A DNA stretch of 64,000 bases from Selaginella moellendorffii. Its lineage: Eukaryota > Plantae > Lycopodiophyta. Location: assembly GCF_000143415.4 (NCBI RefSeq), contig NW_003314354.1, forward strand, positions 224,575-288,574, read 5' to 3'. Of the stretch, positions 7,484 through 29,214 are shown one piece after another (positions within the stretch are counted from its first letter, which is position 1; each line of letters starts with the position of its first letter). Both the position numbers and the translations under genes were made by a program. Below the pieces are notes generated by a model. That model did no database searches. It was not told the DNA's origin and saw nothing but the letters and a program-made list of their open reading frames with translations.

Positions 7484-10400
7484 CTAATTCTTGTCTTCCC
7501 TCCCGCGGAGCGAGGCGCTGGAATGGGTGACGAGGCGGAGGTCGATTCCCATGCTGTTGAGCTCCTGCACCAGCAGCTTGCAGCTGTAGGGGATCTCCAG
7601 CCTCGCGAAGCCCGGGAACTTGTCCTTGCAGAAGCGGCAGCTGGGCGCCCGCGACCGCCCAATGCTGGCCATGCGGTCGCAGCGCGTGCAAACCTCCACC
7701 TGGTGGGGATCACTGAGGTGGAACATCCGCTCCTGGATCGACGCCGCCGCGCCGTGCGCCACCAGGCTGCTGCGCTCCATCTGCGAGAACTTGATCCCGC
7801 CATACTTCTGCCGGTCCTTGATGGGCTGCCGCGTGATGCTGTCATGCCGCCCGATCCTCCTCCACTTGATCTTGTCGTCCGCCATTTGCATCAGCTTTTG
7901 GTAGAAGCAAACGCCGACGAAGATCTCCGCCTTGATCATGGAGCCATAGAGGCCGCTGTAGAACCGCTCGTTCCCAGACTTTTGGAAGCCACACCTTGAC
8001 AAAACCAAGAACATCGATAGGATCGTAGAACAAAGCGAAAGAAAAGAACTTAGATACCTGTGGAGAGCAGCACCAAGTTGATCCGGCGAGGCGCTGCTAA
8101 ATGGAGTGGTATTCACCCTCACTCCCATCGCGGCGGCCTTCCCTGCGATGCTCTCGAGCATCTGGCCCAGAGTCTGGCGAGTCGGGAAGGCGTGGGGATT
8201 GATGATCACGTCCGGGACGATCCCCTGGCGAGTGAAGGGAAGGTCCTCCTGGCTCAAGCAGCAGCCGATCACGCCCTTCTGCCCGTGCATGCTGCTAAAC
8301 TTGTCGCCAGCCTGCGGAGCTCTCGTGCTCGCGATCTTAACTTTGACGCCGCCGTGCGGAAAACTCGCGCTCGCGGTTTTAAAGTTGACGTCGTGCGATC
8401 CCTGGGCGATTTTCGGGAGCCGCACCACCTCTTTCACGGACCCCTCCTCGAAGTTCTTGAGGAAGATGCTGCTGTTGCTCACTGTCCCTTCTTTCAGCTT
8501 CCGGGTCTTGCCGATCACTGCCTGCGACGACTGGAGACGCGCACCGATCTCTGGGAAGCCATCCTCGTCCAAGTGCTGATACCGCTGCTGCGGAGAACCG
8601 TCCTCCTCCACAGGCCTTCCAAAGCTCTCCTCGGAGCTCTGCAGATTGATGTTGTAGCGGTGAGTCCTCTCGTGGATGGAACGGAATAAACCACGGTCGA
8701 TGGCCGCCTGGTTGAAGATAAGTGAGTCCTCCTGGTTATAGCCGTCGTAGCACGCCACGGCGACGACGCAGCTCTGGCCGTGCATCAACTTCTCCGGCCA
8801 TCCCCGCATCATCGCGGAGTCGTTTGGTGAGAGAAGCCGACACATGCTAGTCGACACCAGCTGCTTCTGCGGATAGAAAAGGCTGTCCGACGTCGTGTCA
8901 AAGCGTTTGCTCGGGTTGCACGAGTAGTATCCGATTGCATGCTTCGAGTGTTTCTGAGCTTGGTAGGTGACGCGGGTGCTGAGGTTGTGCTGAGCGAACG
9001 GAATGGTGGACGCTGTAATGGACAGCATCGCTGCCGGATGCAGCTCCATGTGTGTGTAGCAAATCCCTGACCTCAGATCGCTGTACCTTGAAGCTATCAC
9101 GCATTGCTCTTCTTCCTCGGGCCCCAGCAGCTCCACCAGTCCTTCCTGGAGCAAAAAGCGGACCTTTTCCTCCCCGTTGCTCAGTTCACGGAGCTCAGAC
9201 ACATTGTCGTCTGTCAGTAGCCACTCGTTGTTTTCCACGATGAAGACAGGCCTCAAAACTCGCCCTCCGTCAGTAAAGATTTGCAGCTCGCCATGCTTGT
9301 TTGGTGCTATCTCCACCTGAGAAGAAAATAATCTCTTCAGCTTTACAAAAGCCGGAAACGTCAAAACTCATACCTCCGAATGGATGGCACCTCGGCGTCG
9401 CCTGTTGCGAAGGTGCAGGACAGCAGCCTTAGCTTCATCCCGTGTTGACAGCCCGAGCAGTCGTCCATTGAGAAATACCTTGTCAAAGACATGGAGCTGC
9501 TGGAGGGGAACTTCATCGACATCTTGTAAGTAGCCGCTGAGGTTGTCGAGCACATCGGTTTCATCGCGATAAGAGGAAATCATCGCAAACAGCGCCAGAG
9601 TCTTGAGGTGGCCACAATTTTCCCCTTCAGGAGTTTCGACCGGGCAGAACCTTCCAGTGTGAGACTTGTTTCTGCAGAAAGAAAAGAGCTATAGCATGAT
9701 TGACACAAAGAGTTTCACTTACGGGTATCTGCTGTCATTAACTTTGCCCGAGTACTGAGATGGAGTTCTTACGTGCCGGAGATGAGCCAGTGTACAAGTG
9801 ACGTTTTGCCGTTTTAGCGCTTCCACCACCCCGCTGCCATACGTCTGTGGCTCAGCCCAAACTCCCCTCTTGAACGCGTCTCTAAAGTCACAAGTGACGA
9901 TCTTATCGTTGAAGATCCCGTCGGTGACGCTCTTCATCAGCAGCATTTTCTTGCAAGTCTCCCTCATGAAACGAGTCATAGCCTTGGTCAGCAGTAGCGC
10001 CAGAAGCTCGTTCACGCCCAGGATCCTTTTATTGACGAGGCTGTTCTTTCGAGGCTGCCGGCGACCAAGATACGATGTGCAAAGGAACTCCACCATGTAG
10101 CCGAGGTATATCACCTTGCTCTTGGGAGAATCGAGAGCGGAAAACAGAGCGTCGACAAAACTTCCTTTGAGCTTCCTGGACTTGGAAGCTAAGAACTCCT
10201 GGTTGGCGGCACAATCCCGGTGATTGACGTCTTCGTCCCCGAAGAAGTCGGAAACCTGGTCGGCGGCCTCGCGCAACGAAGGTAGGATCATGTTGGCGAG
10301 CTCGGGATCATTTGTGGCGTGTATCACGTCCAGGACACTCTTGTCCGTCGCCAATCCCAGAGCACGAAGCGCTACGACGACAGGGACTGGATCGGCTCCC

Positions 10401-11161
10401 GTGATAGACAACTCCAGGTTGATGATTCCTTTGTCCTCCTTGAGAAGAACTCTCGTGAAAGTGTTCCGGAAAGACAATCCTTTGTTGGGATAAACAACGT
10501 AGCTCTTCCAGCAGCCCTTCCGAGAGATGGAGCATCTCGCCCCAAAGTTCGAGTCTTGAGGCACCACAACCTGGAAAGTTGTAGAAAGTCATTCCAGCAA
10601 ACCAAGAGGTGAAAAGCCCAAACCTTCTCAGCTCCCTCGACGATGAAGTAGGCTCCAGGATCAAGAGGACAATCGATTTTTCCATCGGCATGGGCGTTTG
10701 AGAGCTTGGAGCCGATCATACACGGAATCTCTCCGACAAAAACTTCGTCATTTCGGAAGGACTCGTCGACCTTCTCGTTAGAGAGCTGAGAAGAAAAGAA
10801 AGAAACCTCAGTCAAGCAAAAGAAGAATGAAACACACTCCTCTTTCCTCTCTAGCTTCACAGGCAACGAAATGTATATCATCAAAGCCCTTCTTTCTCAC
10901 CCTGACATGGATGTCCGCGAACAATCTTGCCGAGTAGCTCTGATCCCCGAGGCGCGCCTCCCAGGGATATTTCACCACGGGCGGCCGGAGCGACGCATTC
11001 AGGAGCTTGATGGACGCTGTGCTGCCCTCCTTCTCCATCGAAATCTCCTCCGTCTGCTGGAAGAGCGACGGCAGCGCCTCACAGAAATCGTCGAAGGAGT
11101 CGATGAGATGCGCGACAGGACTCCTCCCTCGCAGGAACGCCGCAAGCACATCCTCTGCCAT
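7484..11161 (-). CDS. NRPD2: Second-largest subunit of RNA polymerase IV/V (NRPD2/NRPE2-like), about 6 exons, divergent
   Basis: GDKFSSMHGQKGV (NRPD2 type; RPB2 has ASRHGQKG), GYNQEDSLIFN, INPHAFPTRQTLGQ, CPVETPEGENCG, DCPLDPGAYFIVEGAEKV and a C-terminal CxxC...CxxC zinc ribbon. The frame stays open across the inferred GT-AG introns. Confidence 0.9.
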
Positions 11162-11559
11162 GATCGCTCGCTCGATCGCTTGATTTCTTGCTAAAACCCT
11201 AGAATGCAGGCTAGAAAGCTAGCTAGAACTAGAACATAAAACCCCTCCTCTCCATTAGTCCCTAAAATCTAATTTGTTCTATTGCCTGGTTTGTTTTAAC
11301 TTAATCTAATCCATCGTCAACTTCTTCTCGGCATCAGTAGACAAGGTAAGCATCTGGGACTCTAGTTAGGTGCAAACTTACATTACTTCCATAAACACTC
11401 CTATCTATTGAACAGAGTGTCTTCTAACTTTCTTTTTTTTTATGGTCGTTCGACCTGCTGCTCGTTAGCACGGACAACCATCAGCTGCTAGATGCTTCGC
11501 CCAGGGAGAAGATGGAGGGAGCATCGTCTTATGAGTGTGTAACCAAGCGAGAAATGGCC

Positions 11560-13000
11560 TTGTATGCTGAAATCTGCCCTTGTGTACAATGCCCACTGTG
11601 GAGTCGGAAGAGCTTGCAACACAAATTTTAGATGCTGATCCACGAAAGTTGGATTATCTGTGGACGTTCCACAGTTTTGGTTGATGTCTAAGGCCCCAGT
11701 GTGAGCTTTCTGGAATTTCCATGGGTGAAATCCCTTTTTGTAAACAACATTAATTTGAGATTTCAGAAAAGTAATGTAGCTAGAACTACCACCCTGGTAC
11801 GGTGGGACAAGTATGACCGACAGAGCATGATGTAAGTGCTTCAACAAATCCAGCAGAAACACATTGAGCCCTATCCGGTATTCCTCGCAAAAGGGTTTGA
11901 AACTCCATTTCTTAGCTGTTTCTTCAGCACGCTTTAGATCACCCTATAAATCCAATAAAATCCAGGTTAAAAACTAAGTACTTCGTATTGTGACGTCCAC
12001 TCCTGAATATTGTCCCACAAGACTTGCCAATAGACGCTCCAAAGCCCACCATTTTCTGGATCAGCATTCTGTTATAACTCTCGCGTTGCTCGTCTGAAGT
12101 AGCCAACAGCACCAGGGTACCCAAATACCGTGAGAGGCAAGTCCTTTTGTGGCGAAGAAGGTAAAAGAAAGCATGGTAGAGTCACTCCCTCCACCTACAA
12201 AACAAATGTTTTAGTAAATTGAAATTAGAAGAAGCACCCCATACTTTAAGAAGCGCTATGTCAGGTCCAAATTCAGGGCACTCTTTCCTGGTACTGTAAA
12301 TAGAGGTGGCATTTCCTTGAACTGTGCAGCGAAAACCAAATTCACGAACTTTTTGAATGGGCACAAATTCCCCTGTTCAGAAACTTTAGTCAAGTTATGG
12401 TATCCAATCTGGTGGTGGTGTACTTACCTGCATAAACTAGCACCTCCTTCAATTGCCACTTCATGTTCTTCCCCTAGCTGTCAGAAGCATATGCTGTGAA
12501 CCTGCAAAAGCAGTGCCGTTAAACCTCAAATTTAGAATAGAGAGAAATAAAAAACTAAACCACTCACCAATGTGATTTTGATTGAAAGAACTCTGTGTGT
12601 ACTTTTCATGTTTTCAATCCCAACGTATATTTGTTGCTTCATCTTTGTAATGGGACTGCAATCAGGACTCAAAGGGATCTGTTTTGGGAGCTCTCTTGCT
12701 GGTTTCCAATAACAAGCATAAAAACGGGAGAACTTACTTAGATGTGAGAATCTTTGCTATAAAGATTAGAAACAGCAGCTGCTACTATGTTGCCTTCTGG
12801 ATCATTAGTCTGTGGAGTTTCATCATCCAGATCCTCAACATCCCCAGCATCATCTTCTGTGCCCACATCCACGTCCGCATTATCTAGTGTGACTCCACCA
12901 CAACGGGCTGTTCTCCAGAGGTTCATTTCATCTGCTTGACGATCGATGAGAGAAGGCTATCTTGGCTTGAATAGTTTCTGTGCAGTTTGCAGAACCCACT
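11560..13000 (-). pseudogene. Degenerate multi-exon trypsin-like serine peptidase relic
   Basis: Spliced fragments PDIALLK|VEGVTLPCFLLP...LTVFGYPG, AQCVSAGFVEALTSCSVGHTCPTVPG and PWKFQKAHTG...TDNPTFV. Frameshifts and stops are present, and the Ser-containing motif expected after PG is missing. Confidence 0.45.
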
Positions 13001-13149
13001 TGGATGCCTTGGGGCTTGCACTTGTTGCCGACCAAAGGTGTACCAAAGATGACAAAGAAAATCTCTCTGTACCTGAAGCAACTAAGGAATCGGGCAAGGA
13101 GCAAGATCAAGAAACTAAGAATCCAAGAGGGAAATCGAAAGAACACCCT

Positions 13150-13585
13150 GCTGTGTTGAACCCTAAGCGCTGCCAAACCACCGTTAAGGCAAAAAAGTAC
13201 TAAGAATGGGTTGATGGAGTATTTACCAATGGCCTGGTCGTAAATTTTCTTTACGATTGAGACGAAGGCTAACAAGTGAGAAGCCCTGTTCCTGTGCGAA
13301 GCTCCATCATTTAGCTTCGTCGCTTCTCCTAATTGCCTAAGATCCAAAAAGCCGAAAGACGCTCAGCCATGGAGCTGCACTTGGAGTCTCCGAGTCATCG
13401 AAAATGTCTTTGTGTGACAAGTCGCACCAAGCACCAAGCCAGACACAATGCCTGCATTCCCCAATCGTTAGAACAAAGATGGAAAGAAGTTTGAACCATT
13501 GTGGAAGCAAAGTTTTGCAGCAGCACCACCTCAAATAAATCTGATCCCAGAAAATGTCAAATCTCAGCCAACTTCGGAATAAGCG
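13150..13585 (-). pseudogene. Inverted, deletion-riddled copy of the CFAP119-like gene 5' half and its upstream region (parent about 27905-28575)
   Basis: The reverse complement shares gacttgtcacacaaaga, gatgactcggagac, cagctccatggctgagc, ttaggagaagcga, gcacaggaacagggcttctc and gccattggtaaat with the parent. Confidence 0.85.
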
Positions 13586-13586
13586 A

Positions 13587-13770
13587 CCAGCTCCACCAGA
13601 CCAAGACCATTCTAGAATCGATCGATGAAGAAAAGCTCTCGAGGTTGCGGGAAAATGGGGCTAGAGCAGCGAAGCATATGGAGTGGCTCTCGCCTCCACA
13701 GCCGGAGGACATGGTCTTGTACCAGTATGGTGGCAGCGCCACGTCACTCGCTACGTGGATTGAATCTAGC
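13587..13770 (+). pseudogene. Inverted copy of the exostosin 3' end (parent 24430-24628)
   Basis: DQLHQTKTILESIDEEKLSRLRENGARAAKHMEWLSPPQPED is nearly identical to the parent, with internal deletions. Confidence 0.9.
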
Positions 13771-13812
13771 GTTAGGAGGGCTGAGCTGGCACTTCGGCCG
13801 AAGTGGTTTGCC

Positions 13813-15474
13813 ATGGCGGAGGCGAGGAGGGTGACGAGCCGGGATTCCTGTAGAGCAAGTTCTGTTCCAAAGTTTGGAGGATGGAAGTTCCCGCAGCGCG
13901 CCATAGATCCTTGGTCCAAGCCTGGGATCGAAATGCAACTGGAGAGTGTGGATGGGATTGGATTGCTTTCTCCGCGATTTGTTCCGTATCGCCCAGTTGG
14001 TATACTTAAGCCGAGGTTGATATCGACTTCTTTTGTTTTCGTCTTTGTTTTCCAGGTGTCCCGGATTTAGTACGAGATAGATCGCTGCTGCCAAAGTGTT
14101 ATAGATTCTACAAAGGAGGCTACCAGGAAACGAAGAAACCGACGTTGTTTGACGTTGTTGAGGACGAAGGGAATCATGTGGTTCTCCCGCTGAGAATCAA
14201 AGGATGCCAATGGAATGGGGAACGATGGTGTGCTACCAGCTTTTCCGCTAGTGAAGCCCGCGGCTCAAATGGTTCCAACATTCTCCAGAGCGAGCTTTCC
14301 AAGTCCGAGCAGCGGCTGAAGCGAAGCCGGTGATTGTTTTCGATTTTTGTGCTGCCGTTTTGAAGTGTTTTCCAACAGGAACCACACAGAGTGGGAGATT
14401 ATTTCTTGCGTGAGACTTGGACTCCTCCCAAGCACGAGAAGACGAAAAAGAAAACGCCAGTTCCCCCTTTGGCTGTGAGTCTGATTCCAATGTTTAACGA
14501 GTCTGAAGAAGAAGCAAAGAACTCTGCCTTGATCAACGAGTACCGGATGGAAGCCAGGCGCGTGGCATATGAAAAGTACGTGTTTTCAACTTCACTGAAC
14601 TTTGTGGTTGATGTTTCCCTGTTTGGAATGCATCTAGATCCAAAGGTGAAGACGCTCAACCCAAGCCAGGTGTGGAGCCGACCGTCACGGGCATGCCACC
14701 CAAAGCTCTTGAGGACTACAGCCTCCAGCAGCTGGGCTCCATACTTGGGAAAGAGATGAAGTTCTCAGCTTTGCAACACAAATTCAACAAGCAGCTGTAC
14801 GAGTTTTGCGACTCGTCCGACACATTACGTCCATTTACATTCCGCCGGAAGTACGCTGCTCTCAAGGTAAAGTTTTTCTCGCAGATTCTTTTCTTTCTCA
14901 GCTGGTATCTCCTTCTCCGGACAGGCTCTCCATGACAAAGAGGCTGCAAAGGACATCAATCCGGCCGCCAGCATGGACCAAGCCGAAGTGTTCCTCAAAG
15001 GAATGGATCAGCATCCGTGGTACAAGGAGCTTGCAAAGCTCATATTTTCGGGTGATAAATGTGGCTCCAGGGGAGAGTGGCTCATCCTTAACATCCTCCG
15101 CCTGGCCGTGGAGGTACGCTTGCAAAGTTCTAGATAGATGCGCAACGCTATTCATCCGTTCTTGGTTCCAGGGAGGAGGCAGATTCTCCAGAAAGGACTT
15201 CGTCCCATTGCTCTACTTCCTGGACAACGAGGGAGTGAATCTCAGCGAGCCAGGCACAGTGAAAGCTCTCGGATTGATCAGGATGGCACTCAAAGTTCCC
15301 AACGAAGCTTTGGAAGAATTCGTGGAGTCTTGCGATGTCGTCCCGGAGTGGCTTCTCAGCCTCTATCATCCCAGGTATGGAAGGCTCATCTCGTTTCGCA
15401 GGCCTACGCCGCTCCAGCTCAAAGCCTCGCGCTACTTCAGTCGCTTTAGAAGCATGCAGTTCTCCTTCGTGTAA
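13813..15474 (+). CDS. Uncharacterised multi-exon gene ('gene X'); most complete of three local copies, may carry a frameshift near 14330
   Basis: GT-AG-bounded exons read MAEARRVTSRD..., ESEEEAKNSALINEYRMEARRVAYE, HKFNKQLYEFCD, MDQHPWYKELAKL and DFVPLLYFLDNEG...FSFV*. I recognised no family and could not join exons 2 and 3 in frame. Confidence 0.5.
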
Positions 15475-15961: not shown

Positions 15962-17456
15962 ATGGCCCCAAACCCATCAGCATTGCTACTGGCTCCCGTC
16001 CCAAACTCCTCCTCTTCTAGGAAGCGCCACGCAGAGGACGGTGGTAGTGGAATTTCCATTGGAGCCGGCCCTGCGACCAAACGGGCTGTCAAAACGCCTG
16101 ATGTTTTGTTTCGCCTCCTTGTCCCTGCAGGGAAGATCGGCAAGGTGATCGGCAAGAAAGGATCGCAGATAAAGAAGCTGAGAGACGAGACTGGCGCTCA
16201 CATCAAAATCGCGGATCCCATGAACGTATGTAAAGTTCTCTCTTTTCGTTACTTCCTTGGGTTGTTTAAGATCTTGGCTAACGTGTTTGATGCATTTGAT
16301 TCCAGACTACCGAGGATCGAGCGGTACTGATATCTTCCAAAAACGAGGGTGTCTCGGACAGAAGTTGTGCCGAGCTTGCTCTCCTTGAAGTCGTCACGAT
16401 CTTACTAAAGGTGACATTTTTTTGATCGCGAATATGTCACTCGTCGCTCTGAACATTTCTCATTTTCTAGGACGGAGATGGTGCGACGCCTTCTGCGGCA
16501 ATTGGTCCTCAGCACCAAGGCTCTCCCAATTTGACCAGGCTGCTCATCGCCGGCTCCCAAGCCGGGAGCTTGATCGGCAAAGCCGGGGCCAACATAAAAA
16601 ACATTCGAGGCTCATCCTCGGCCAGCGTCCGAGTTTTGCCTTCGGACCAGCTCCCGCTTTGCTCGGCAGCTTGTGAGACAGATCGGCTAGTCCAGGTATC
16701 TCTTATTTCTCTTTCCTTTTTGTTCCTCGTCTCAGCTTAGAAGCGCTTCCAGATCTCGGGCGAAGTGGCCGCGGTACAAATGGCCATCGAGCTCGTAGCT
16801 GCCAACTTAAGGTAGTATTTTTTGGGGGTGGGGTGGTGTTGCTTTGCGGCAGACGATAATTTTACTGCTGCGCTCGCAGAGATAATCCACCAAAGGAAAC
16901 TGTGCCTACAAATCCAGAAGCCAAGACGGCATACTTTCTAGGAATCGATGGAAACACCGGACAGCAAGTACTACTCCCGCATTCTTCCGTGGCTGCTGTC
17001 TACGGGCATTCTCCTTCCTCCATGGCTCTCTACGGCCTCCAACCGCATCCTCTCGCAGGTCCAGCATACGCTGGCGGGGTTTTGGCCCAAGCTCCGCCGC
17101 TCTACGCAAATCCTGCCGCTCGACTACCACCGATGCTACCAAAAGTCTCGGCGGAGATGAGCGTTCCCAGCTCGGTCATGGGAGGCCTCATTGGAAAAGG
17201 CGGCTTTCATATCTCCCACATGAGGAGTGTTTCCGGTGCTACCATCAAGGTACGTTTTTTTTCGTTTTTAGCTCCGCTCGATCGATCGGGAAGATCTAAG
17301 TTTTTGTTTCTCGGTTTTGTGAAGGTCAATGGAAGCAAAGAAAGCTCCGTGGAAAGAACCATATTGTTTGAAGGGACTCAAGAGCAAGTAAATGCCGCGC
17401 AAAGTTTGGTTCATGCGTTTCTTAACGGGCAATCGGCCCTTCCTTCGTCGACGTGA
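15962..17456 (+). CDS. Three-KH-domain RNA-binding protein (PCBP/FLK/PEPPER-like)
   Basis: Three KH GxxG loops: KIGKVIGKKGSQIKKLR, AGSLIGKAGANIKNIR and MGGLIGKGGFHISHMRSVSGATIKV. GT-AG introns. Confidence 0.88.
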
Positions 17457-18365: not shown

Positions 18366-18489
18366 AGAGAGCAGAGAGTAGAGAGCTCATTTGAAGCCTC
18401 AAATAAGAACGTGTACCTCGTTATTGTAGTAAAAAGCATTAACTCATCAATCTTTTAAAAGGATTTTCTCAAAGGAGATTATTTGTCAA

Positions 18490-19345: not shown

Positions 19346-19394
19346 TTGTGTTGTTGATCAGATATGCTTATAATTTCGAATTGTGTCTTCGCTT

Positions 19395-20929
19395 TGCTTC
19401 CTGGACAACGAGGGAGTGAATCTCAGCGAGCCCGGCACAGTGAAAGCTCTTGGATTGATCAGGATGGCACTCAAAGTTCCCGACGAAGCTCTGGAAGAAT
19501 TCGTAGAGTCTTGCGATATCGTCCCGGAGTGGTTTCTCAGCCTCTATCATCCCAGGTAAGGTTCATCTCGTTTTGCAGGCCAACCAGCTCAAAGCCTCGC
19601 GCTACTTCAGTCGCTTTCGAAGCATGCAGTTCTCCTTGTGTGAACAAATTACCGACGTGGCACATTGCATCCTCCAATTAGAACCGCCCAGCCCTCATTC
19701 CTTTTATTAGAGCGAGACACGTAAGCGTGTGCCCTGTATATAGAGTATCATCCTTTTGGTACCTCCACGGCCAGACGGAGGATGTTAAGGATGAGCCACT
19801 CTCCCCTGGAGCCACACTTATCACCCGAAAAGATGAGCTTTGCAAGCTCCTTGTACCACGGATGCTGATCCATTCCTTTGAGGAACACTTCGGCTTGGTC
19901 CATGCTGGCGGCCGGATTGATATCCTTTGCAGCCTCTTTGTCATGGAGAGCCTGTCCAGAGAAGGAGATACCAGCTGAGAAAGAAAAGAATCTGTGAGGA
20001 AAATTTTACCTTGAGAGCAGCGTACTTCCGGCGGAATGTAAATGGACGTAATGTGTCGGACGAGTCGCAAAACTCGTACAGCTGCTTGTTGAATTTGTGT
20101 TGCAAAGCTGAGAACTTCATCTCTTTCCCAAGTATGGAGCCCAGCTGCTGGAGGCTGTAGTCCTCAAGAGCTTTGGGTGGCATGCCCGTGACGGTCGGCT
20201 CCACACCTGGCTTGGGTTGGGCGTCTTCACCTTTGGATCTAGATGCATTCCAAACAGGGAAACATCAACCACAAAGTTCAGTGAAGTTGAAAACACGTAC
20301 TTTTCACATACCACGCGCCTGGCTTCTATCCGGTACTCGTTGATCAAGGCAGAGTTCTTTGCTTCTTCTTCAGACTCGTTAAACATTGGAATCAGACTCA
20401 CAGCCAAAGGGGGAACTGGCGTTTTCTTTTTCGTCTTCTCGTGCTTGGGAGGAGTTAGCGGAAAAGCTGGTAGCACACCATCGTTCCCCATTCCATTGGC
20501 ATCCTTTGATTCTCAGCGGGAGAACCACATGATTCCCTTCGTCCTCAACAACGTCAAACAACGTCGGTTTCTTCGTTTCCTGGTAGCCTCCTTTGTAGAC
20601 TCTATAACACTTTGGCAGCAGCGATCTATCTCGTACTAAATCCGGGACACCTGGAAAACAAAGACGAAAACGAAAGAAGTCGATATCAACCTCGGCTTAA
20701 GTATACCAACTGGGCGATACGGAACAAATCGCGGAGAAAGCAATCCAATCCCATCCACACTCTCCAGTTGCATTTCGATCCCAGGCTTGGACCAAGGATC
20801 TATGGTGTGCTGTGGCAACTTCCATCATCCAAACTTTGGAACAGACCTTGCTCTACAGGAATCCCGGCTCGTCACCCTCCTCGCCTCCGCCATGGCAAAC
20901 CACTTCGGCCGAAGTGCCGCCTCAGCCCT
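19395..20929. pseudogene. Second copy of gene X: 5' part on minus (19758-20929), 3' end flipped onto plus (19395-19680)
   Basis: Near-identical ORF translations (e.g. 14672..14935+ versus 19941..20204-). 19395-19680 matches 15215-15505 in direct orientation. Confidence 0.9.
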
Positions 20930-21642
20930 TCTGTGGTTTAGGGTACGTGGTTTACGTGGTACCCTAAACCACGTACCACATATGGTTTAGTGTGTTGTGT
21001 CGCAACGCAGTCTCCACTAAAGACCCACCAGGAAACCACCGTTCAGAGCCTGAACACGACATTGCTTCTATAGCTGGAATGGAGAGAAGTATAAAAGCCT
21101 ACCTCTTCTTCGGCCGATACAGCTCCTCGGGTACACAGCTCACCGCCTAGAAACGATCAGGGAGAAAGTTATAGCCAGCGAGAAGCGAACGGAATGTAAC
21201 TTACACGTCAAGCTGTGATCGTAGTAGACCGGGAGGTCGTAGCGGCCGAGCCAGAGACGCGCGTGAGCGCTGGCATTGACAATCGTGTAGTAGTGCGGGA
21301 GTGTTGAGTGTGGCGGCCGGTGCAGCAGCAGCGAGCGTAGGAGCTGGTTGGACCGGATCCCGCGCAGCAGCAGCCTGGCCTCGCTCACACGTAATGGAGA
21401 AGTGGTAACTTCGTCGCATGGGTACGCTGGTGGCACTTCGGGCAAGGCGTTCCTGTGTGAGTACTCCTCCTCCACTATGTCTCCTAGCCGTCTGTAAGTG
21501 GCAACAGCAGCCCAGTTCCATCCCAGGTTCGTCACTGGCAAATAGAAAAAGTAGTCACTCTCCGTCAGCTTGGAGAGAACATCATCCAGTCCAACGGCTA
21601 GACTCGCTCCTGATCCCTTCCCTGTTACTAAGTAACAACAAA

Positions 21643-21859
21643 ATGCGTTAGCACTGCACTCGGGTCAAAACTTACGTACGGCCACCATGCAGCTCCTGCC
21701 ATCCTGGAATGGGTTAGCACAGCACTCGGCTCAAAACTTACGTACCGCCACCATGCCCCTCCTTCCTGCCATTCTGGAATGCGTAAGCACAGGCACTCTG
21801 GGTCAAAATTTACGTACCGCCACCACGCCGCGAGCTGCATCCTTTCTGCCGCTCTGGAA
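21643..21859 (-). repeat. Three tandem units of about 66-80 bp, each a mini-exon plus short intron
   Basis: Plus-strand unit: t(t/a)agcac...gcactc..g.tcaaaa.ttacgtac.gccacca...tgcc..ctggaa. On minus each unit has a GTACGT donor and a GCTAAC/GCTTAC branch-like site, and each exon is preceded by TTCCAG. Confidence 0.8.
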
Positions 21860-23139
21860 AAACACGAATCATCCATAGAGGAAAGAAATCAAAGGAAGAA
21901 AAACCATGATACCAAAGTAGAGGGGCTCCAGGGAGGGCCGCACAGGCTCGAGGGGGGCGGTCCTCCATGACAAGTTGGCCCGGTCGATGAGGAGCAGCGG
22001 CATCCATGCGCACGCGCACGCCTTTGCTGCCACAAAAGCGCTCCCAAAACATCTGCAGCGGCTTCCCAACCTCGTCATCTCCATCGCAAGCACGAAAGTC
22101 GTGGCCCAGCAGCTCCCCAGCAAACTCCACCACAAGATCACACGCAACCTGAGAAGTCGGCGGAAGGGATTTTCGGAGCCCTTCACGCTCCTCAGGGGGC
22201 AGGCTTCCCAGGTAGAGGATTGACACGAAGGAGAAGAGGGTGTGGTCGTTAGCAGGCGGATAGAAGAGGTAGCCCAGGATGTGCGCATGCGCGCTTGGCT
22301 TCGAGGAAGCCAGTGGGAGCGATCCTCCAGACACTATATGGTAATGTCATTTACTTTCTCATTCATTCGATCAAAATGCATTCCTGGTTTAGGCCTGTGA
22401 AGCTACTAAGCTCTTCAAGTTCCTACTAAGCGCGTCAAGTTCCTACTAGGAATCGTTCCCTGGCAGAATTTTGCCACTAGTTTTGCTGCGGGACCAAACA
22501 AATATATCCTTTTGCTGAGCTTTTCCTCTCGAAGATGAGAGAAGAAGGACCCTCGGTTGGCTCGGTTCTATCTTCGAAAGATTGAATGACACAAGATGGG
22601 CTGGACATTTCGAATGATGTTTTCGCGGGAAAATGCTGACGTGGTCTTAGCTTGAAGTCCTTACAAACAAGCTTGGCTATCGTTTGTCCCCATTCCACGC
22701 CAGGAGCATATCCGCGTCGAATCCATTCTGCTCGCCACTGGAGATAGATCGCTGCGCTGCGTTTGCTCCGACTATAAATGTTGTGAGACGCCTCTTGAGT
22801 TGCGCCTTCGTCTTCTCCACCATTCTTCGTCCTTCCCCGTAACGCCTCTAGTCTCTTTCTCGGGCTTTTCTCCGCACAACTCGCGAGATGTGACTTCGAG
22901 AGCTTGGGTGTGTTGAGCTTCCTCCTGTGCCTGTGCCCACCAGTCCTCCACAGCTTGAAGATAACTCCCCACACGCCACCTCTGCCAGAGGAATCGCTTA
23001 CGAGCATTGCCTCCATACCTGAGGTAGCCGCTTTAAAGGCTCGCGATCTGTCGTCCACCACCGCTTGTCGAGGCGTAAGCTCCAAGTCTCCGCTTCCCGG
23101 CCGTGCTTTTGCCTAGCAGCGATAGCGATAGCAACAACA

Positions 23140-23575
23140 ATGCCTTCTCCGGTAGAAGCAGCAGCAGCTTGTCCGACTCCTCCTCTTGCTCGGACAACGA
23201 ATCTCTCTGCTCCTACCGTCGCCTCAGGAGCGCCATGCGCCCTTCCTCTTCCTCCACCTCCAGCTCCTGCGCGAGGGATCGCTCCAGCAGCAATCGCGAG
23301 CTCGCGGCTAGGAGGAGCGGCGTCATTTCTCTCGGCCTCGTTCACCACGGCGGACTCATCTGCGGTGGCAGGGAAGTGTGGAGACAGTCGGATCCTTGTC
23401 ACGTTGAGGAGCAAGCTTCGCGCCGCTGCTTGTGGCTGGAGACAAGCTCTTTGAACAGCACTCGGGACAAGAAGATCCGAGTGTGGCGGCTATCCAAATC
23501 CAACCACATGCAGCACACTCTCGTCGTCGCAACGCTTCTGACTCTCAAGGACCTGGTAGCAGAATTTGACAGAGT
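23140..23575 (+). pseudogene. Fragment of a JINGUBANG-like WD40 protein gene
   Basis: RDKKIRVWRLSKSNHMQHTLVVATLLTLKD resembles the HQDxKIRVW...HKxxxTLPTLKD segment of this plant WD40 family. Ser-rich N-terminus; truncated. Confidence 0.55.
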
Positions 23576-23614
23576 CAACGTCGTGGTCGAGGTGAGAACA
23601 AACATAGTGAGCTG

Positions 23615-24435
23615 TGTACTTCCGGCGGAATGTAAATGGAGTCGCAAAACTCGTACAGCTGCTTGTTGAATTTGTGTTGCAAAGCCGAGAGCTTCATCTC
23701 TTTCCCAAGTATGGAGCCCAGGCTGCAGTCCTGGCATGCCCGTGACAGTCGACTCCACACCTGGCCTGGGTTGAGCGTCTTCACCTTTGGATCTAGATAC
23801 ATTCCAAACAGGGAAACATCAACCACAAAGCTCTGAATCAGTGAAATTGAAAACACGTACTTTTCATATGCCACGCGCCTGGCTTCCATCCGGTACTCGT
23901 TGATCAAGGCAGTGTTCTTTGCTTCTTCTTCAGACTCGTTAAACTTTGGAATCAGACTCACAGGCAGACGGGGGACTGGCGGTTTCCAAGTCTCACGCAA
24001 GAAATAATCTCCCACTCTGCGTTGTTCCTGTTGGAAAACACTTTAAAAGGCAGCACAAAAATCGTTGGAGCCGTGACTAGCGGAGAAGCTGGTAGCACAC
24101 CATCGTTCCCCATTCCATTGACATAGCGAGAGAATCACAAGGTCAACTCTATAAATCTCGTACTAAATCCGGGAAACCTGGAAACCAAAGAAGAAAAAGA
24201 AAGAAAATGATCACAACCTCGACTGAAAGAAAGTTCACGCTTACCAACAGGCAAATCGCACGCTCTCCAGTTGCATTTCGATCCCAGGCTTGGACCAAGG
24301 ATCTATGGCGCACTACGGCAACTTCCATCCTCCAAACTTTGGAACAGACCTCGCTCTACAGGAATCCCGGCTCGTCACCCTCCTAGCCTCCACTACTTCG
24401 GCCGAAGTGCCACCTCAGCCCTCCTAACGCTAGAT
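23615..24435 (-). pseudogene. Third, most deleted copy of gene X, directly downstream of the exostosin gene
   Basis: GDYFLRETW...ESEEEAKNTALINEYRMEARRVAYEK...HKFNKQLYEFCDS with multiple deletions. Confidence 0.88.
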
Positions 24436-25548
24436 TCAATCCACATAGCGACTGACGTGGCGCCGGCGCCATAGCTGGTACAAGACCATGTAGAACGCGT
24501 CCTCCGGCTGTGGCGGCGAGTGCCACTCCATATGCTTCGCTGCTCTAGCCCCATTTTCCTGCAACCTCGAGAGCTTTTCTTCATCGATCGATTCTAGAAT
24601 GGCCTTGGTCTGGTGGAGCTGGTCGCGGCTGAGGACGATCGCGAAGCTATTCCAGTCCAGAATGTCCTGGAACGGCAGATCGGACAGCTTCCCCGCGGAG
24701 AAGATGACCGGAATGCATCCCGATCGGACGGCCGGGATGACGAGGTGCCGATCGCTGGAGCCAAGGCTGAGACAAAACCTTGTTGTCACTAGCAGCTGTA
24801 GATCCATTTTCACTGCGCCAGCGACGAAGCTCTCGTCGGATTTCCAAGACGCTGGAACATCACTCGCCGCGTAGCCCTGGGAGCTGGAATCGTACACCGC
24901 GAGATTCCACCGACGGCGCTGGGGAGGATCGATCGATCCTCCTGCGGGCGGCATTGTGATGTCCTTGTGCGCGAGGAATTCCTGCGCTCCATGCCTGGCC
25001 AGTGGAAAGCAGGCGATCTGGATCGCGTTCTTCTTGAGCTCAAGAACATTCCTGGACCAGTCGCTCGTAATATCGTGGCACGAGACGAAGAAGTGATCCG
25101 CCCCGAGCGATCGCTGCCAATACGGGTAGAGATCTCGCAGCTGCTGGATGTAAGACTTGAGGGAGTGAGCGATCCCTTTCGGATCGGGCCTCTTCTTCCA
25201 GATCGCCGAGATCGACGCTGGCAGGAGAAACAAGTCCGCCGCCTCCGGATCATCCGTCACAAACCCTGAGGCCAGCAGCGAATCCACAAAGACTCGATCT
25301 ATCGAACCTGGCCGTGCTGCCTTCCCATCTCGCAAATCTGGAGCGCTGGCGTTCTGGATCATCGGGTAGACGTAGACCTTGAAGCGATCTAGAAACTCCT
25401 GGTAGTCCCGTGCAAGAAACGCTGGAGAATGGTAGAGACTGCGATCAAGATCGCTAGCTCCCTCGAAATCCAGCAAGAACGCGAGAGAAATCGAAGCATC
25501 GATGAGGAAAAAGAGAAAGAACAAGGATGATCCGCCATTGCCAGCCAT
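24436..25548 (-). CDS. Exostosin-family glycosyltransferase (GT47), intronless
   Basis: N-terminal hydrophobic anchor, FKVYVY, DPEAADLFLLP, YPYWQRSLGADHFFVSCHD, RFCL, GCIPV, LPFQDILDWNSFA and DAFYMVLYQLWRRR. Confidence 0.92.
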   Translation of the reverse strand: MAGNGGSSLFFLFFLIDASISLAFLLDFEGASDLDRSLYHSPAFLARDYQEFLDRFKVYVYPMIQNASAPDLRDGKAARPGSIDRVFVDSLLASGFVTDDPEAADLFLLPASISAIWKKRPDPKGIAHSLKSYIQQLRDLYPYWQRSLGADHFFVSCHDITSDWSRNVLELKKNAIQIACFPLARHGAQEFLAHKDITMPPAGGSIDPPQRRRWNLAVYDSSSQGYAASDVPASWKSDESFVAGAVKMDLQLLVTTRFCLSLGSSDRHLVIPAVRSGCIPVIFSAGKLSDLPFQDILDWNSFAIVLSRDQLHQTKAILESIDEEKLSRLQENGARAAKHMEWHSPPQPEDAFYMVLYQLWRRRHVSRYVD

Positions 25549-25776: not shown

Positions 25777-27823
25777 ATGCTTTCTAGCTTGATTTCCAGC
25801 TCCAGAGCCAGGGTTTGTCGATGCGCGCAGCGCTGCCGCGGATTACCGGGCCGGAGCTTGCTGGGTGAGGAATGCGGCGAGGTATTTGGGATCCGGCGCA
25901 GCGTTCTTGTGTCGTGCTACAGGAAGGAGGCTGATTTGCGGAAGAGCGACGGCCGTGAGGAGAATTCCAATGCCAGGCCGCCCCTGACGTACTTCATCGC
26001 GAAATATTCTCGGGGATCATTCCGATTCGAGCAGCGACGATGTAAGTTCCAGCATTGCCCGTATTTTGCCAGTATCGGCATTTTGCGCTACTTAATATGT
26101 GCTTGTGTGTAGTTCACAACTCCGGCACGTCTCATCGAGGAGAAGAAGAAGAACAAGAGAGCGATCCACAACCCGCCGTAGTTCATGGCCATAGGTGAAG
26201 TTACAAACTTTCCTTTCTCTTATAGTTCTTCACGTATATTGTTTTGCGTGGCAGTGAAAGGGCTGTAGTGACTGCGCTTTGGTGCAATTTTCTAGTTCTG
26301 TCTCTAAAGTGTGGCGTCTGGTTTATGACTGGAAGCCATGTTATGCTCGCGGAAGCAGTACATTCTCTAGCGGATCTAGCGAACCAGGTCTCGTGAATTT
26401 TCTGATAGCAGCCTTTTGCTTATCCAGAATGATTTTTCTTTCCAGGGGTTGCTTGCGTATGGTCTCGTCAGCTCAAAGCGTGCTCCAGATGCCCTTCATC
26501 CGTGAGTGTTAGTTCCACTTGCCATTCCAATTTTCATTTATACTGACGGTTGTTCTTTTGTTCGCTTTTCAGGTATGGTTACTCCAAAGAACGCTTCGTT
26601 TGGTCGCTGATATCAGCTGTCGGGATATTTTGTCTGGGCTCTGGCGCAACAATTGTCCACGGAATTTCCAACTTATGGCAAGCTGAGGTATCTTTGTTCT
26701 ATTTTTCAGGCTTTGCACGTAACGTCCTTTTTTTATTGTGTGTGTAGCCTATCGACAACATCTTTTCTGCTGCCATTGTCATTGGTGGTTCAATGTTAAT
26801 GGAAGGTAATGACGAAATGTATGCGCGGATTATTACGGTGCTCCTTGCAGGAGCTTCACTCTACGTGGCTGTGAACGCTGTGCGGCAAGGAGCTGCGTCG
26901 GAAGGAATGAAGTTTCAAGAGTACATTTGGCGTGGTCACGATCCAACATCCGTGGCTGTCATGATGGAGGTACTTCATAATACAATTCATTTCTAGAGTT
27001 TTACCTTCGAATCATTTTCAGGATGGTGCTGCGGTCACTGGCTTGTTTATAGCTGCTATGTCGCTGACTGCTGTGCATTTAACGGGCAATCCAATCTGGG
27101 ACCCTCTTGGATCTATACTCGTGGGAAATCTTCTCGGAATGGTAAGATTGTGTTAGTCAAGACATGAACATAACCCGTGCCCACACGCGAACAGGTGGCA
27201 GTTTTTCTGATTCAACGAAATCGCCATGCTCTCCTTGGTCGCTCAATGGAACCCAAGGATGTGCAACGCGTGTTGGACTTGCTTGCATCAGATCCTGTAA
27301 GTTAGCTATCTATAGACCTTCAAGCCTCAAATAAGCGAAAATGCAGGTTGTTGATGCGGTCTATGACTGTAAGAGCGAGGTGATCGGGCCAGGATCGTAC
27401 AGATTCAAGGCAGAAATCGGTAACGTCTGTTGATCTCGTCGAACTGCGCTAAGATTGTCCATTCGCAGATTTTGACGGTGTAGTAGTTGTACATAATTAC
27501 TTGCAACGGACGGGGCGAGAAGCCTGGATAAAGGAGGTCTGTTCGTGACTTGGCCCTCTTTCACTTTTTATCAATCTTCGTTCTCCTTGTTTAGTTTCAG
27601 AATGCTGCGAAAGACCCTGCTGCTTTGGAGACCGCACTTGCAAACTACGGTAATGCAAATTTTATTTTCTCCAGTCTGTTCTTATGGTTTTCTTGCAGGA
27701 GAAGAAGTGGTGGCTGCTCTGGGCTCCGAAGTGGACAGACTAGAGAAAGACATCCAGAAGATCGTTCCTGGCGTTCGGCATGTAGATATCGAGGCTCACA
27801 ATCCCAAAGGTCCACTTCCATAA
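25777..27823 (+). CDS. MTP7: Metal tolerance protein 7 / MTPC4 (CDF family, ZnT9-like)
   Basis: SERAVVTALWCNF, SHVMLAEAVHSLADLANQ, HPYGYSKERFVWSLISAVGIFCLGSG, GHDPTSVAVMMEDGAAVTG, DCKSEVIGPG and RHVDIEAHNP. Confidence 0.93.
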
Positions 27824-28021
27824 AAGGGATTTTGCTAATACTTTTCTTGTGAAACTAACGACCTTTGACTGGAGTTCGCGGGGAAAAAAAGTATGAAACA
27901 AAGAAGCTATGATTCGGCCGAAGTTGGGATGAGCGGCTGAGATTTCTCTTCACTAACTGACATTTCTGGAATCAGATTTAGGTTTCTCCGGTTTCAGGTG
28001 GTGCAAAACTTTGCTTCCACG

Positions 28022-29214
28022 ATGGTGAGTGTTCTTCAAATTTCTTTCATTCTTTTGTTCTAACGAGTGGATAATGCAGGCCGAGTGTCTGGCTTGGCGC
28101 GACTTGTCACACAAAGAGCTGGCTCACATTTTTGATGACTCGGAGACCCCAAGTGACGTGCGGAGGTAAGCAAACAGCTCCATGGCTGAGCTTCTTTCTC
28201 CCTTCATGGCTTTCTGGATCTTAGGCATTTAGGAGAAGCGATGAAGCTGAATGATGGAAGCATTTGTTCCGAGATACTGCTTGACTTGCACTACGGCTCC
28301 CTCTAGTAGGATTTTCTACATGTCTTTCTCACTCACTGGCTTCTCGAATCCTTGTCAAGCTTTGCACAGGAACAGGGCTTCTCCCTTGAGAAGATGTCAG
28401 CCTTCGTCTCAATAGTCAAGGCAATTCACGACCAAGCCATTGGTAAATCCTCCATCAACCATTCTTAAGTGTCCACGTACTAATTTCTTTCACTTTTTGC
28501 CTTAAAGGCATGCGTTTAACAGTAGAAAGAAGCTGGGAAACAGCAAAGAACCTCTTTCTCTTGCACAGCGTCCAGCGACCACCATTCTCAATCGGCTTGT
28601 TTACATTTGGAGATCTCCAAGAGATAACGAGATACGTCCTCAACACGTAAAACAATCTTCCCAGCTTCAAAGCTTCTACTCGATGAGTCCAGCTCCTATG
28701 CTCTTTCCTCTCACAGATACTACAGACACTTCAAGCTCTACCAATACGCGTTCTGCCCGACTTACTACCTCAACATGGACACTTGGGAGTATAATCTCGT
28801 AGAGCTAGCCCCGGAGCTAAAGTCGCTAGATCTCGCAATAACACAGGAGGAATACGACGTCCAACAGGAAGCTCTCAGGAAACAGCAAGAGGTGGGCGAC
28901 GAGTTTCACAAGCTTTACGAGCAAAATCTTCTCCTGCGCAGGAGGAACAAGCAAAAAGGCTCGAAGACAAGCGGCTGGCTGAAGAAGCCGAGAGGCAAGC
29001 CAGGATCGAGGCACAGTATCGAGGTAGAGGCTACTTACTTGGGCTTGGATCTCCAATGCTAAGCTGGTTCTCGCCGCTTCCAGCGTCCATCCCGGATGAG
29101 ATCACAAGAAAAGTCAACCAGGTTGTTTCGCGCTACATGGATGAGATGCGGGCCGAGTTTGACGCCAAGCTGGAACAAAAACTCGCCGAGCTGGGGGCTG
29201 GAGCTGCAAAATAG
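28022..29214 (+). CDS. Flagellar central-pair C1a-32/CLAMP-domain protein (CFAP119/CCDC189-like)
   Basis: Spliced MAECLAWRDL...ILLDLHY...FAQEQGFSLEKMSAFVSIVKAIH...LFLLHSVQRPPFSIGLFT...YVLNTYYRHFKLYQYAF, followed by a coiled-coil tail. Confidence 0.75.

What the first reader, a model, noticed from the sequence alone, without database searches (positions are those of the whole stretch)
7484..28600. Inversion with duplicated breakpoints and reciprocal gene loss (DUP-INV-DUP or inverted-triplication-like)
The central block 13.15-18.37 kb reads CFAP119 relic, exostosin relic, gene X, KH, NRPD2 relic. Its right end is an inverted copy of the left flank (NRPD2, 10.3-11.3 kb). Its left end is an inverted copy of the right flank (23.6-28.6 kb), missing about 3.3 kb that includes MTP7. 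This reconstructs an ancestral order NRPD2-KH-X-exostosin-MTP7-CFAP119. Each gene keeps one best copy, split between segments: NRPD2 on the left, X and KH in the centre, and exostosin, MTP7 and CFAP119 on the right.
Basis: partly seen in the sequence, partly recalled or inferred. Interest (0 to 1): 0.75.

Follow-up and report, generated by a model that had tools for sequence, protein, structure and literature searches.

The report
Nested inverted gene-fragment duplications in spikemoss
A 21-kb stretch of the spikemoss Selaginella moellendorffii genome really is a small inverted block with upside-down partial copies of the neighbouring genes at both ends. It was built in at least two rounds rather than one, and it is an ordinary, if tidy, example of a known kind of complex rearrangement.

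Summary
10325-11319 (NRPD2 5' end) recurs inverted at 17454-18364. 23602-24626 and 27912-28500 (5' part of gene X with the exostosin 3' end; CFAP119 5' end) recur inverted at 13583-14868 and 13175-13568. A clean 3285-nt gap in the inverted copy removes most of exostosin and the whole MTP gene.

It also missed that both novel junctions carry kb-sized spacers, one of which (J3) may hold a gene.

Gene X is an intact, apparently unannotated six-exon, 455-codon gene. I found homologues only in Ginkgo, Ceratopteris and six short (86-160 aa) unnamed ENA proteins.

Divergence falls into two classes:
- about 2-3% for NRPD2 a/a' and X c'/c2;
- about 6-10% for c'/c3, d/d2 and b/b'.

The difference between the classes gives p <= 0.003, so a one-step DUP-INV-DUP is not enough.

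A fused gene model from the other haplotype shares the old exostosin - X-relic - spacer junction. It then runs into 113 residues that are absent from this window, next to the young copies.

Best reading:
- an old inversion with an inverted duplication at one breakpoint, followed by a deletion and decay;
- then a young, possibly haplotype-specific, templated insertion.

This scan has already noted several inverted duplications elsewhere in this genome.

The parts
7484..11161 (-). NRPD2-like gene (second-largest subunit of Pol IV/V), the intact copy. ATG at 11161, stop at 7484-7486.
   Evidence: Rpb2 domains 1, 2, 4, 5, 6 and 7 in successive ORFs. An Rpb2_3-like motif lies in ORF 9371-9688. Best PDB matches are 8hil_B and 7eu0_B, Pol IV/V subunit 2. 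Exon 1 reading and ATG.
10325..11319 (-). Segment a: NRPD2 exons 1-3 plus 158 nt upstream. It is the source or partner of a'.
11320..13174 (.). Spacer J1 at the first novel junction. Origin unknown.
   Evidence: No DNA or translated match elsewhere in the window. No Pfam hit on its ORFs.
13175..13568 (-). b': decayed inverted copy of the CFAP119 promoter and first exons.
   Evidence: Inverted match to 27912-28500, JC 0.10, 17 indels. Frameshifted CFAP119 exon remnants.
13583..13773 (+). e': relic of the last ~63 codons of exostosin, contiguous with the start of X.
   Evidence: tblastn of exostosin residues 309-358 maps to 13585-13725 at 88%. The alignment to 24436-24626 is continuous.
13813..15474 (+). 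Gene X, intact. Six exons: 13813-13999, 14056-14329, 14390-14575, 14638-14866, 14925-15113, 15172-15474. 455 codons. It spans segments c' (13774-15117) and d (15205-15514).
   Evidence: All introns are GT-AG and 56-62 nt long, phases are consistent and there is no internal stop. It is colinear with Ginkgo Gb_37424 and Ceratopteris KP509_05G095100.
15962..17456 (+). KH gene (three KH domains), single copy.
   Evidence: KH_1 hits in ORFs 15893-16327, 16471-16737 and 16860-17453. ATG and TGA.
17454..18364 (+). a': NRPD2 5' pseudogene fragment. It starts at the KH stop codon and ends inside NRPD2 exon 3.
   Evidence: Inverted match to 10325-11319, JC 0.027. Deletions of 19, 10, 10 and 28 nt break exon 1.
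18365..19385 (.). Spacer J2a. Origin unknown.
   Evidence: No match in the window. No Pfam family in the fused model that reads through it.
19386..19689 (+). d2: fragment of X exon 6 plus about 40 nt of 3' flank, in the same orientation as the intact X.
   Evidence: Direct match to 15205-15514, JC 0.081. tblastn with P0064 and P0066 shows an in-frame stop.
19759..20932 (-). c2: inverted copy of X exons 1-5. It lacks 170 nt (14251-14420: end of exon 2, intron 2, start of exon 3).
   Evidence: 98% to 13774-15117. It is the sister of c' in the three-way site patterns, 63:9:5. Lesion mapped.
20933..23601 (-). Spacer J3, shared with the other haplotype. It holds ORF 21143-21664 (candidate gene Y), a 66-nt tandem repeat and a 43-nt palindrome at its left edge.
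   Evidence: The other-haplotype model P0074 maps through 23438-20976. Allelic identity is 83-94% in blocks, with 83 identical residues in a row. Weak CFAP68 match, E 0.015. Tandem repeat.
23602..24435 (-). c3: decayed relic of X exons 1-4, directly downstream of exostosin.
   Evidence: Inverted match to c', JC 0.061. It has 13 deletions touching X exons, one of which removes the ATG. The same relic-specific changes are present in the other haplotype's model.
24436..25548 (-). Exostosin (GT47) gene, intact, single exon, 370 aa.
   Evidence: Pfam PF03016. Identical to database protein P0001 and 98% to its allele XP_024544526.1.
26000..27830 (+). Cation-efflux (CDF/MTP) gene, only copy. Limits are approximate. 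It lies wholly inside the stretch missing from the inverted copy.
   Evidence: PF01545 hit on exon ORF 26547-26744. CDF-like exon ORFs from 26226 to 27820.
27912..28500 (+). Segment b: CFAP119 promoter and first exons. Partner of b'.
28074..29214 (+). CFAP119 (FAP119 / C1a-32) gene, intact copy. Limits are approximate.
   Evidence: CLAMP domain and the FAP119 chain of 7n6g. Putative ATG and terminal ORF.

Best explanation
This is a real, multi-step local rearrangement of a gene-dense Selaginella moellendorffii locus.

Step 1 (old, present in both haplotypes). The segment carrying KH and most of X was inverted. The breakpoints were staggered, or the replication fork switched templates. As a result a ~4.9-kb piece was kept in both orientations: X exons 1-4, exostosin, MTP and the CFAP119 5' end. 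This gave each copy one native and one novel junction. X stayed whole in the inverted block. Exostosin, MTP and CFAP119 stayed whole on the right.

A 3285-nt deletion then removed the redundant exostosin and MTP from the inverted copy. The truncated leftovers (b', e', c3) decayed by many small deletions.

Step 2 (young, about as old as the difference between the two haplotypes, and possibly specific to this one). A templated insertion was laid down between the KH stop codon and spacer J3. It consists of an inverted 0.9-kb copy of the NRPD2 5' end (a'), about 1 kb of unknown DNA, and an inverted 1.2-kb copy of X exons 1-5 (c2). It looks like repair by short-range template switching.

Shown: the copies, their orientations, boundaries, lesions and two divergence classes, and the shared old junction in the other haplotype.

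Inferred: the order and mechanism of events, and that step 2 is haplotype-specific.

The old fragment d2 is not explained.
For: Copies, orientation and boundaries.

One native and one novel junction per old copy:
- e'-c' is continuous with intact X, while b' stops at 13175.
- c3-e is continuous with intact exostosin, MTP and CFAP119, while c3 stops at 23602.

Two divergence classes:
- young: a/a' 0.027 and c'/c2 0.020, mutually homogeneous (p 0.35);
- old: c'/c3 0.061, d/d2 0.081 and b/b' 0.100, mutually homogeneous (p 0.11-0.58);
- between the classes p is 0.003 or lower.

c2 is the sister of c', with c3 outside them (63:9:5 site patterns; nine deletions private to c3).

Relics are truly dead:
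- NRPD2 exon 1 is frameshifted in a'.
- The ATG and 12 further exon-touching deletions in c3, and a 170-nt deletion in c2.

Other haplotype:
- Fused model EFJ15302 (P0074) runs from exostosin into a relic carrying c3-specific changes, then through J3. The c3|J3 junction is therefore old and independently assembled.
- Left of window position 20976 it continues into 113 residues found nowhere in this window. That point is within 44 nt of the c2 boundary.

No N run lies in 1-55111.

Precedent: a dupINVdup with partly duplicated genes at both flanks and an internal deletion in Chlamydomonas CC-503 (PMC9940879). Replicative or multi-break origin is discussed for human CNV-flanked inversions (PMC5338099).
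Against: - No outgroup or second-haplotype DNA was available, so neither the polarity of the inversion nor the haplotype-specificity of step 2 is shown.
- P0074 leaves the window at a predicted splice donor, so the structural difference could begin further left than c2.
- d2 lies between the two young copies yet is old (JC 0.081; p 3e-5 against c'/c2).
- Divergence rises steadily with arm spacing: 4.6, 6.1, 8.8 and 14.4 kb give 2.0, 2.7, 6.1 and 10%. Distance-dependent gene conversion after a single event would give the same trend.
- The a/a' homology begins exactly at the KH stop codon. That fits an ancestral NRPD2-KH adjacency as well as it fits a chance insertion point.
- Kb-sized spacers at both old junctions are not typical of simple two-junction events.
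Confidence: 0.5

Rival explanations
1. One two-sided dupINVdup event inverted KH-X and duplicated both flanks (NRPD2 5' end; X 5' part through CFAP119 5' end) at the same moment. The ancestral order would be NRPD2-KH-X-exostosin-MTP-CFAP119. Later gene conversion between the closer inverted arms lowered a/a' divergence. The X copy d2+c2 arose separately or was also homogenised.
For: - The A C' B' A' C topology is exact.
- KH's stop codon abuts a' with no spacer.
- Divergence increases steadily with the distance between arms.
- The upstream, indel-rich part of a/a' (10891-11319) is 4.9% diverged, close to the old class.
- The same combination of dupINVdup and internal deletion is documented in Chlamydomonas.
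Against: - a/a' differs from c'/c3 and from b/b' at p 0.003 and 0.0003.
- Differences along a/a' and c'/c2 show no clear conversion tracts. The left and right halves of a/a' give p 0.09, and the longest identical run is unremarkable.
- a' keeps six deletions that conversion should have erased.
- 1.9 and 5.2 kb of foreign DNA sit at the two junctions.
- J3 at junction 2 is shared by both haplotypes and may carry a gene.
Confidence: 0.2
2. No inversion ever happened. CFAP119-MTP-exostosin-X-KH always lay in the orientation of the central block. The right flank is an inverted segmental duplicate that took over exostosin, MTP and CFAP119 while the central copies were deleted. a' and c2 are unrelated later insertions.
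For: X and KH are intact only in the central block. Exostosin's 3' end lies in its native position upstream of X there.
Against: - A plain copy should have two novel junctions and the original none. Here each copy has one of each.
- J1 shows no trace of the rest of CFAP119, although b' is only about 10% diverged.
- This route needs more deletions and more steps than the inversion model.
Confidence: 0.1
3. Part of the structure is an assembly artefact of the two-haplotype Sanger assembly. Candidates are the young segment 17454-20932, or the orientation of the 4.6 kb between the 98%-identical arms c' and c2. The cause would be allelic reads joined wrongly, or a spacer flipped between repeats longer than a read.
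For: - The young copies differ from their partners by 2-3%, about the allelic level seen here: exostosin alleles are 98% identical and J3 translations 83-94%.
- The arms (1.2-1.3 kb) exceed Sanger read length.
- The other haplotype's model differs just beyond c2.
Against: - The sequence is continuous, with no N in 1-55111.
- a' and c2 are broken pseudogene fragments with private deletions, not plausible alleles of NRPD2 or X.
- In the assembled orientation X is a perfect six-exon gene.
- The old c3|J3 junction was assembled independently in both haplotypes.
Confidence: 0.08

Closest known systems
dupINVdup / paired-duplication inversions (Brand et al. 2015; Collins et al. 2017, PMC5338099). 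In the green lineage: the chromosome-16 dupINVdup plus internal deletion of Chlamydomonas CC-503 (PMC9940879).
   Same: - An inverted unique middle.
- Both flanks are present a second time, inverted, at the opposite ends.
- Genes are cut and partly duplicated at the breakpoints.
- A deletion lies inside the rearranged block.
   Different: - The two flank duplications differ about 2-4-fold in divergence.
- Both junctions hold kb-sized extra DNA.
- There is a third, rearranged copy of one flank piece.
- The event or events are old enough for the relics to have decayed, and are at least partly fixed rather than de novo.
DUP-TRP/INV-DUP rearrangements (Carvalho et al. 2011; cited from my own knowledge).
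   Same: One segment (X exons 1-4) is present three times, in mixed orientation, next to duplicated segments. Template switching is the favoured mechanism.
   Different: - The order here is inverted-direct-direct, not direct-inverted-direct.
- The three copies differ in age.
- No pre-existing inverted repeat at a junction could be shown.
Other inverted duplications noted by this scan in the same genome (s1-424074, s1-398881, s1-351366).
   Same: Young inverted copies of gene fragments next to their source genes in S. moellendorffii. According to those notes, some differ between the two haplotypes.
   Different: This locus combines two age classes with an inversion-type exchange of flanks involving six or seven genes. 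Those notes were not re-tested here.

Membership tests
dupINVdup (inversion flanked by inverted duplications) | Order A C' B' A' C: an inverted copy of each flank at the far end of the middle block. | tested here: met
   a/a' and (c3..b)/(b'..c') are both inverted and placed crosswise.
dupINVdup (inversion flanked by inverted duplications) | Single event: both duplications are of equal age and there are only two novel junctions. | tested here: not met
   - JC 0.027 against 0.061-0.100, p <= 0.003.
- Spacers of 1.9 and 5.2 kb.
- Extra copy d2+c2.
dupINVdup (inversion flanked by inverted duplications) | The middle segment is inverted relative to an unrearranged reference allele. | not testable with these tools
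No Selaginella DNA other than this window could be fetched.
DUP-TRP/INV-DUP | A triplicated segment whose middle copy is inverted, flanked by duplications. | tested here: not met
   The X 5' copies lie in the order inverted (c'), direct (c2), direct (c3).
Reciprocal gene loss after segmental duplication | Both copies were once complete, and complementary genes were lost later. | tested here: inconclusive
   - Met for exostosin and MTP: there is a clean 3285-nt gap with homology on both sides.
- Not met for NRPD2, CFAP119 and the X relic c3. These end at segment boundaries, so they were incomplete from the start.
NRPD2/NRPE2 (Pol IV/V second-largest subunit) | Rpb2 domain set, and closer to NRPD2 than to the Pol II, I or III paralogues. 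| tested here: met
   Pfam Rpb2 domains. PDB ranking: Pol IV/V subunit 2 at 403 and 402 bits, above RPB2 at 371 bits. No phylogeny was made.
CFAP119 / FAP119 (C1a-32) | CLAMP domain and similarity to a flagellar central-apparatus FAP119. | tested here: met
   PF14769 partial hit, E 0.0011, below the gathering score on one exon. Chlamydomonas FAP119 in 7n6g, E 1.5e-6.
MTP7 orthologue | Orthology to Arabidopsis MTP7 within the CDF family. | not tested
   Only family-level evidence: PF01545 on one exon, E 0.0022, plus CDF-like exon ORFs.

The most novel reading that the evidence does not exclude
The inverted arms work as built-in hairpin sources. Read-through from X/KH across a' and into c2 would join sense and antisense X exons (1.2-kb arms, 98% identical). 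The a/a' pair would do the same for NRPD2, the polymerase subunit that makes siRNA precursors. The locus would then feed back on X and on the RdDM machinery itself. A milder variant: X, the J3 ORF (weakly CFAP68-like) and CFAP119 form a small cluster of sperm-flagellum genes that this rearrangement reshuffled.
Probability: 0.06. Interest if true: 0.65.

Novelty: new member of a known kind. Interest (0 to 1): 0.3.

Why it matters
The locus is a compact, fully readable fossil of a complex inversion-with-duplication in a lycophyte. The breakpoints fall inside known genes. The relics record which copy survived, and two age classes allow the steps to be ordered. If the allelic scaffold confirms that the young part is haplotype-specific, the locus would show such rearrangements still arising in S. 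moellendorffii, and it would give exact junction sequences for inferring mechanism. It also corrects the annotation: the 1522-aa and 1068-aa 'exostosin' models are read-through artefacts, and an intact conserved gene (X) appears to be unannotated. None of this would surprise a specialist in structural variation.

Tried and rejected
- **Other haplotype and own locus.** It was not tried again.
- **Word search with the X exon-6 ORF.** It gave no hit. With hindsight, the 455-aa product lies just outside the length window.
- **Word search with the Ginkgo homologue.** It found only itself.
- **Exhaustive search with the exon-6 ORF.** It found only Ginkgo, Ceratopteris, a short ENA protein (P0065, which represents a cluster of six) and one spurious repeat protein. 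It found no annotated S. moellendorffii X.
- **Joined X model.** Exons were handled one by one, by reference.
- **Family of X.** Pfam found nothing even at E 10. A PDB profile search found nothing. The atlas gave only a sub-threshold CCDC60 lead (0.86), which I do not accept.
- **The 113 'G' residues.** These are the residues of P0074 that are absent from the window. They have no sub-range reference, so they were not searched alone. Scans of the whole protein against Pfam and PDB, and the atlas on residues 940-1068, gave nothing.
- **Spacers J1, J2a and J3.** They have no DNA or translated similarity elsewhere in the window. Rfam found nothing in 6-31 kb. A transposon origin is therefore neither shown nor excluded.
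- **c2 as a retrocopy.** Rejected, because it keeps introns 1, 3 and 4. Its 170-nt gap is not an intron, as it ends in ...CTTGG and removes 110 coding nt.
- **Scan-notes look-ups.** Look-ups by sequence, relatives and words found no note on the allelic region.

Full report
**Source and setting.** The window is from Selaginella moellendorffii. Its exostosin ORF is identical to a database protein on a 741,856-bp scaffold. It is 98% identical to XP_024544526.1 on a 1,266,795-bp scaffold, which is evidently the other haplotype of the two-haplotype assembly. The only N run is 55112-55502, so the whole region of interest is one uninterrupted contig.

**Observation.** Seeded repeat finding and self-BLAST give these pairs:
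- a 10325-11319 / a' 18364-17454, inverted;
- b 27912-28500 / b' 13568-13175, inverted;
- c3 23602-24626 / c' 14868-13583, inverted;
- c2 19759-20932 / c' 15117-13774, inverted, 98%. This pair is not in the finding.
- d 15205-15514 / d2 19386-19689, direct. This pair is also not in the finding.

In the inverted copy b' and c' lie 14-24 nt apart. Their partners lie 3285 nt apart (24627-27911).

**Genes.**
- NRPD2 lies on the minus strand, 7484-11161. It has Rpb2 domains, and its best solved relatives are Pol IV/V subunit 2.
- Exostosin GT47 is a 370-aa single exon at 24436-25548, minus strand.
- A CDF/MTP gene lies at about 26.0-27.8 kb, plus strand.
- CFAP119 lies at about 28.07-29.2 kb, plus strand.
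- KH, with three KH domains, lies at 15962-17456, plus strand.

**Gene X.** It has six exons (13813-13999, 14056-14329, 14390-14575, 14638-14866, 14925-15113, 15172-15474). All introns are GT-AG and 56-62 nt long, the phases are consistent, and there are 455 codons with no internal stop.

X is colinear over its whole length with Ginkgo Gb_37424 (472 aa) and Ceratopteris KP509_05G095100. It has no Pfam family and no solved relative. No annotated S. moellendorffii protein containing its last exon turned up in the exhaustive search. I checked the exons one by one.

**State of the copies.**
- a' is a dead NRPD2 fragment. It keeps the ATG, but deletions of 19, 10, 10 and 28 nt frameshift exon 1, and it stops inside exon 3.
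- b' is a frameshifted remnant of the first CFAP119 exons.
- e' is the last ~63 codons of exostosin.
- c3 is a relic of X exons 1-4. It has 13 deletions touching exons, one of which removes the start codon.
- c2 is X exons 1-5 with a single 170-nt deletion that removes 110 coding nt.
- d2 is part of X exon 6. It lies in the opposite orientation to c2 and is separated from it by 69 unrelated nt. Copy 3 is therefore rearranged around intron 5.

Only exostosin and MTP were lost by a later deletion. The other relics end at segment boundaries.

**Ages.** I counted only alignment columns at least 8 nt from any gap. The JC distances are:

| pair | JC distance | mismatches / sites |
|---|---|---|
| c'/c2 | 0.020 | 23/1158 |
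| a/a' | 0.027 | 20/750 |
| c'/c3 | 0.061 | 44/752 |
| c2/c3 | 0.078 | 40/542 |
| d/d2 | 0.081 | 18/234 |
| b/b' | 0.100 | 15/160 |

The two young pairs are mutually homogeneous (p 0.35). The three old pairs (c'/c3, d/d2, b/b') are also homogeneous (p 0.11-0.58). Every cross-class comparison tested gives p <= 0.003, and all six pairs together give chi-square p 7e-10.

Three-way site patterns make c2 the sister of c', with c3 outside them (63:9:5). c3 has nine private deletions. I saw no clear gene-conversion tracts.

**The other haplotype.** Two old JGI read-through models help instead.
- EFJ09884 (1522 aa, this scaffold) strings together exostosin, c3, J3, c2 and J2a.
- EFJ15302 (1068 aa, allelic scaffold) strings together exostosin, a relic and J3 down to window position 20976. 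The relic carries c3-specific changes: the 9- and 14-nt deletions, NTA for NSA and K for M. It lacks this haplotype's private 17-nt deletion.
- EFJ15302 then continues for 113 residues that match nothing in the 64-kb window.

Two conclusions follow. The exostosin-c3-J3 arrangement is older than the haplotype split and was assembled twice independently. And the haplotypes differ somewhere left of 20976, where this haplotype has c2, which ends at 20932. The model leaves the window at a predicted GTACGT donor, so the exact point of divergence is not fixed.

J3 is probably not junk. ORF 21143-21664 is identical over 83 consecutive residues between haplotypes. It also has a weak match to the microtubule inner protein CFAP68 (E 0.015).

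**Interpretation.** Each old copy has one native and one novel junction. b'-e'-c' runs on into intact X but is cut off inside CFAP119. c3-e runs on into intact exostosin, MTP and CFAP119 but is cut off inside X. A copy-and-paste duplication cannot give this pattern. An inversion with a duplicated breakpoint can, whether by staggered breaks or by template switching.

The left-hand duplication (a/a') is significantly younger, as is c2. Both lie in the interval 17454-20932, which borders the point where the other haplotype's model departs.

I therefore favour two rounds:
- an old one-sided inversion-duplication, followed by the 3.3-kb deletion and decay;
- a young templated insertion carrying inverted pieces of NRPD2 and X.

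The one-step two-sided dupINVdup remains possible if gene conversion lowered a/a' divergence. The steady rise of divergence with arm spacing fits that idea, and so does the seamless KH-a' junction.

Unexplained: d2 is old but sits between the young pieces, and the origins of J1 and J2a are unknown.

**Comparison with what is known.** CNV-flanked inversions, dupINVdup included, are a described class in humans. They are attributed to MMBIR/FoSTeS or to synchronous repair of several breaks (PMC5338099). A dupINVdup with partly duplicated genes at both flanks and an internal deletion is described in Chlamydomonas CC-503 (PMC9940879). This scan has also noted several inverted duplications elsewhere in this genome. 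The locus is a new, older and compound member of that kind.

**Verdict.** The feature is real and ordinary in kind. Interest is 0.3.

Noticed in passing
window 13813-15474 (+): Gene X is an intact 455-codon, six-exon gene. I found homologues only in Ginkgo (Gb_37424), Ceratopteris (KP509_05G095100) and a cluster of six short (86-160 aa) unnamed ENA proteins. It has no Pfam family, and no annotated S. moellendorffii protein matched its last exon. All named hosts have swimming sperm, and the gene sits near CFAP119. The atlas lead to CCDC60 (0.86) was not confirmed by Pfam or PDB.
   Followed up: partly
window 21143-21664 (-), inside spacer J3: This ORF has 83 consecutive residues identical between the two haplotypes. 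It has a weak match to the microtubule inner protein CFAP68 (E 0.015; motif PHY..(I/L)(V/I)NA..HA..W). In the other haplotype's model it continues into 113 residues that are absent from this window, so the gene may be truncated here.
   Followed up: partly
window 20933-20975: A 43-nt palindrome containing the telomere-like unit TTTAGGG/CCCTAAA lies exactly at the c2|J3 junction.
   Followed up: no
window 17454-17456 and 11317-11319: The a/a' homology begins exactly at the TGA stop codon of the KH gene. One rearrangement breakpoint therefore lies at the first base after KH's coding sequence.
   Followed up: partly
window 18497-25548 (-): The database models EFJ09884 (1522 aa) and, on the allelic scaffold, EFJ15302 (1068 aa) are read-through artefacts. 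They fuse exostosin with X relics and spacer ORFs. The newer 370-aa RefSeq model is the correct exostosin.
   Followed up: yes
window 21642-21829: A 66-nt tandem repeat (2.7 copies, 83% matches) lies inside J3.
   Followed up: no
window 7216-7376 and 56154-56328: A 160-175-nt dispersed direct repeat (83%). One copy lies just beyond the NRPD2 3' end. It may be a small mobile element.
   Followed up: no
window 32001-34000: A very AT-rich stretch (GC 0.23, against about 0.48 around it).
   Followed up: no
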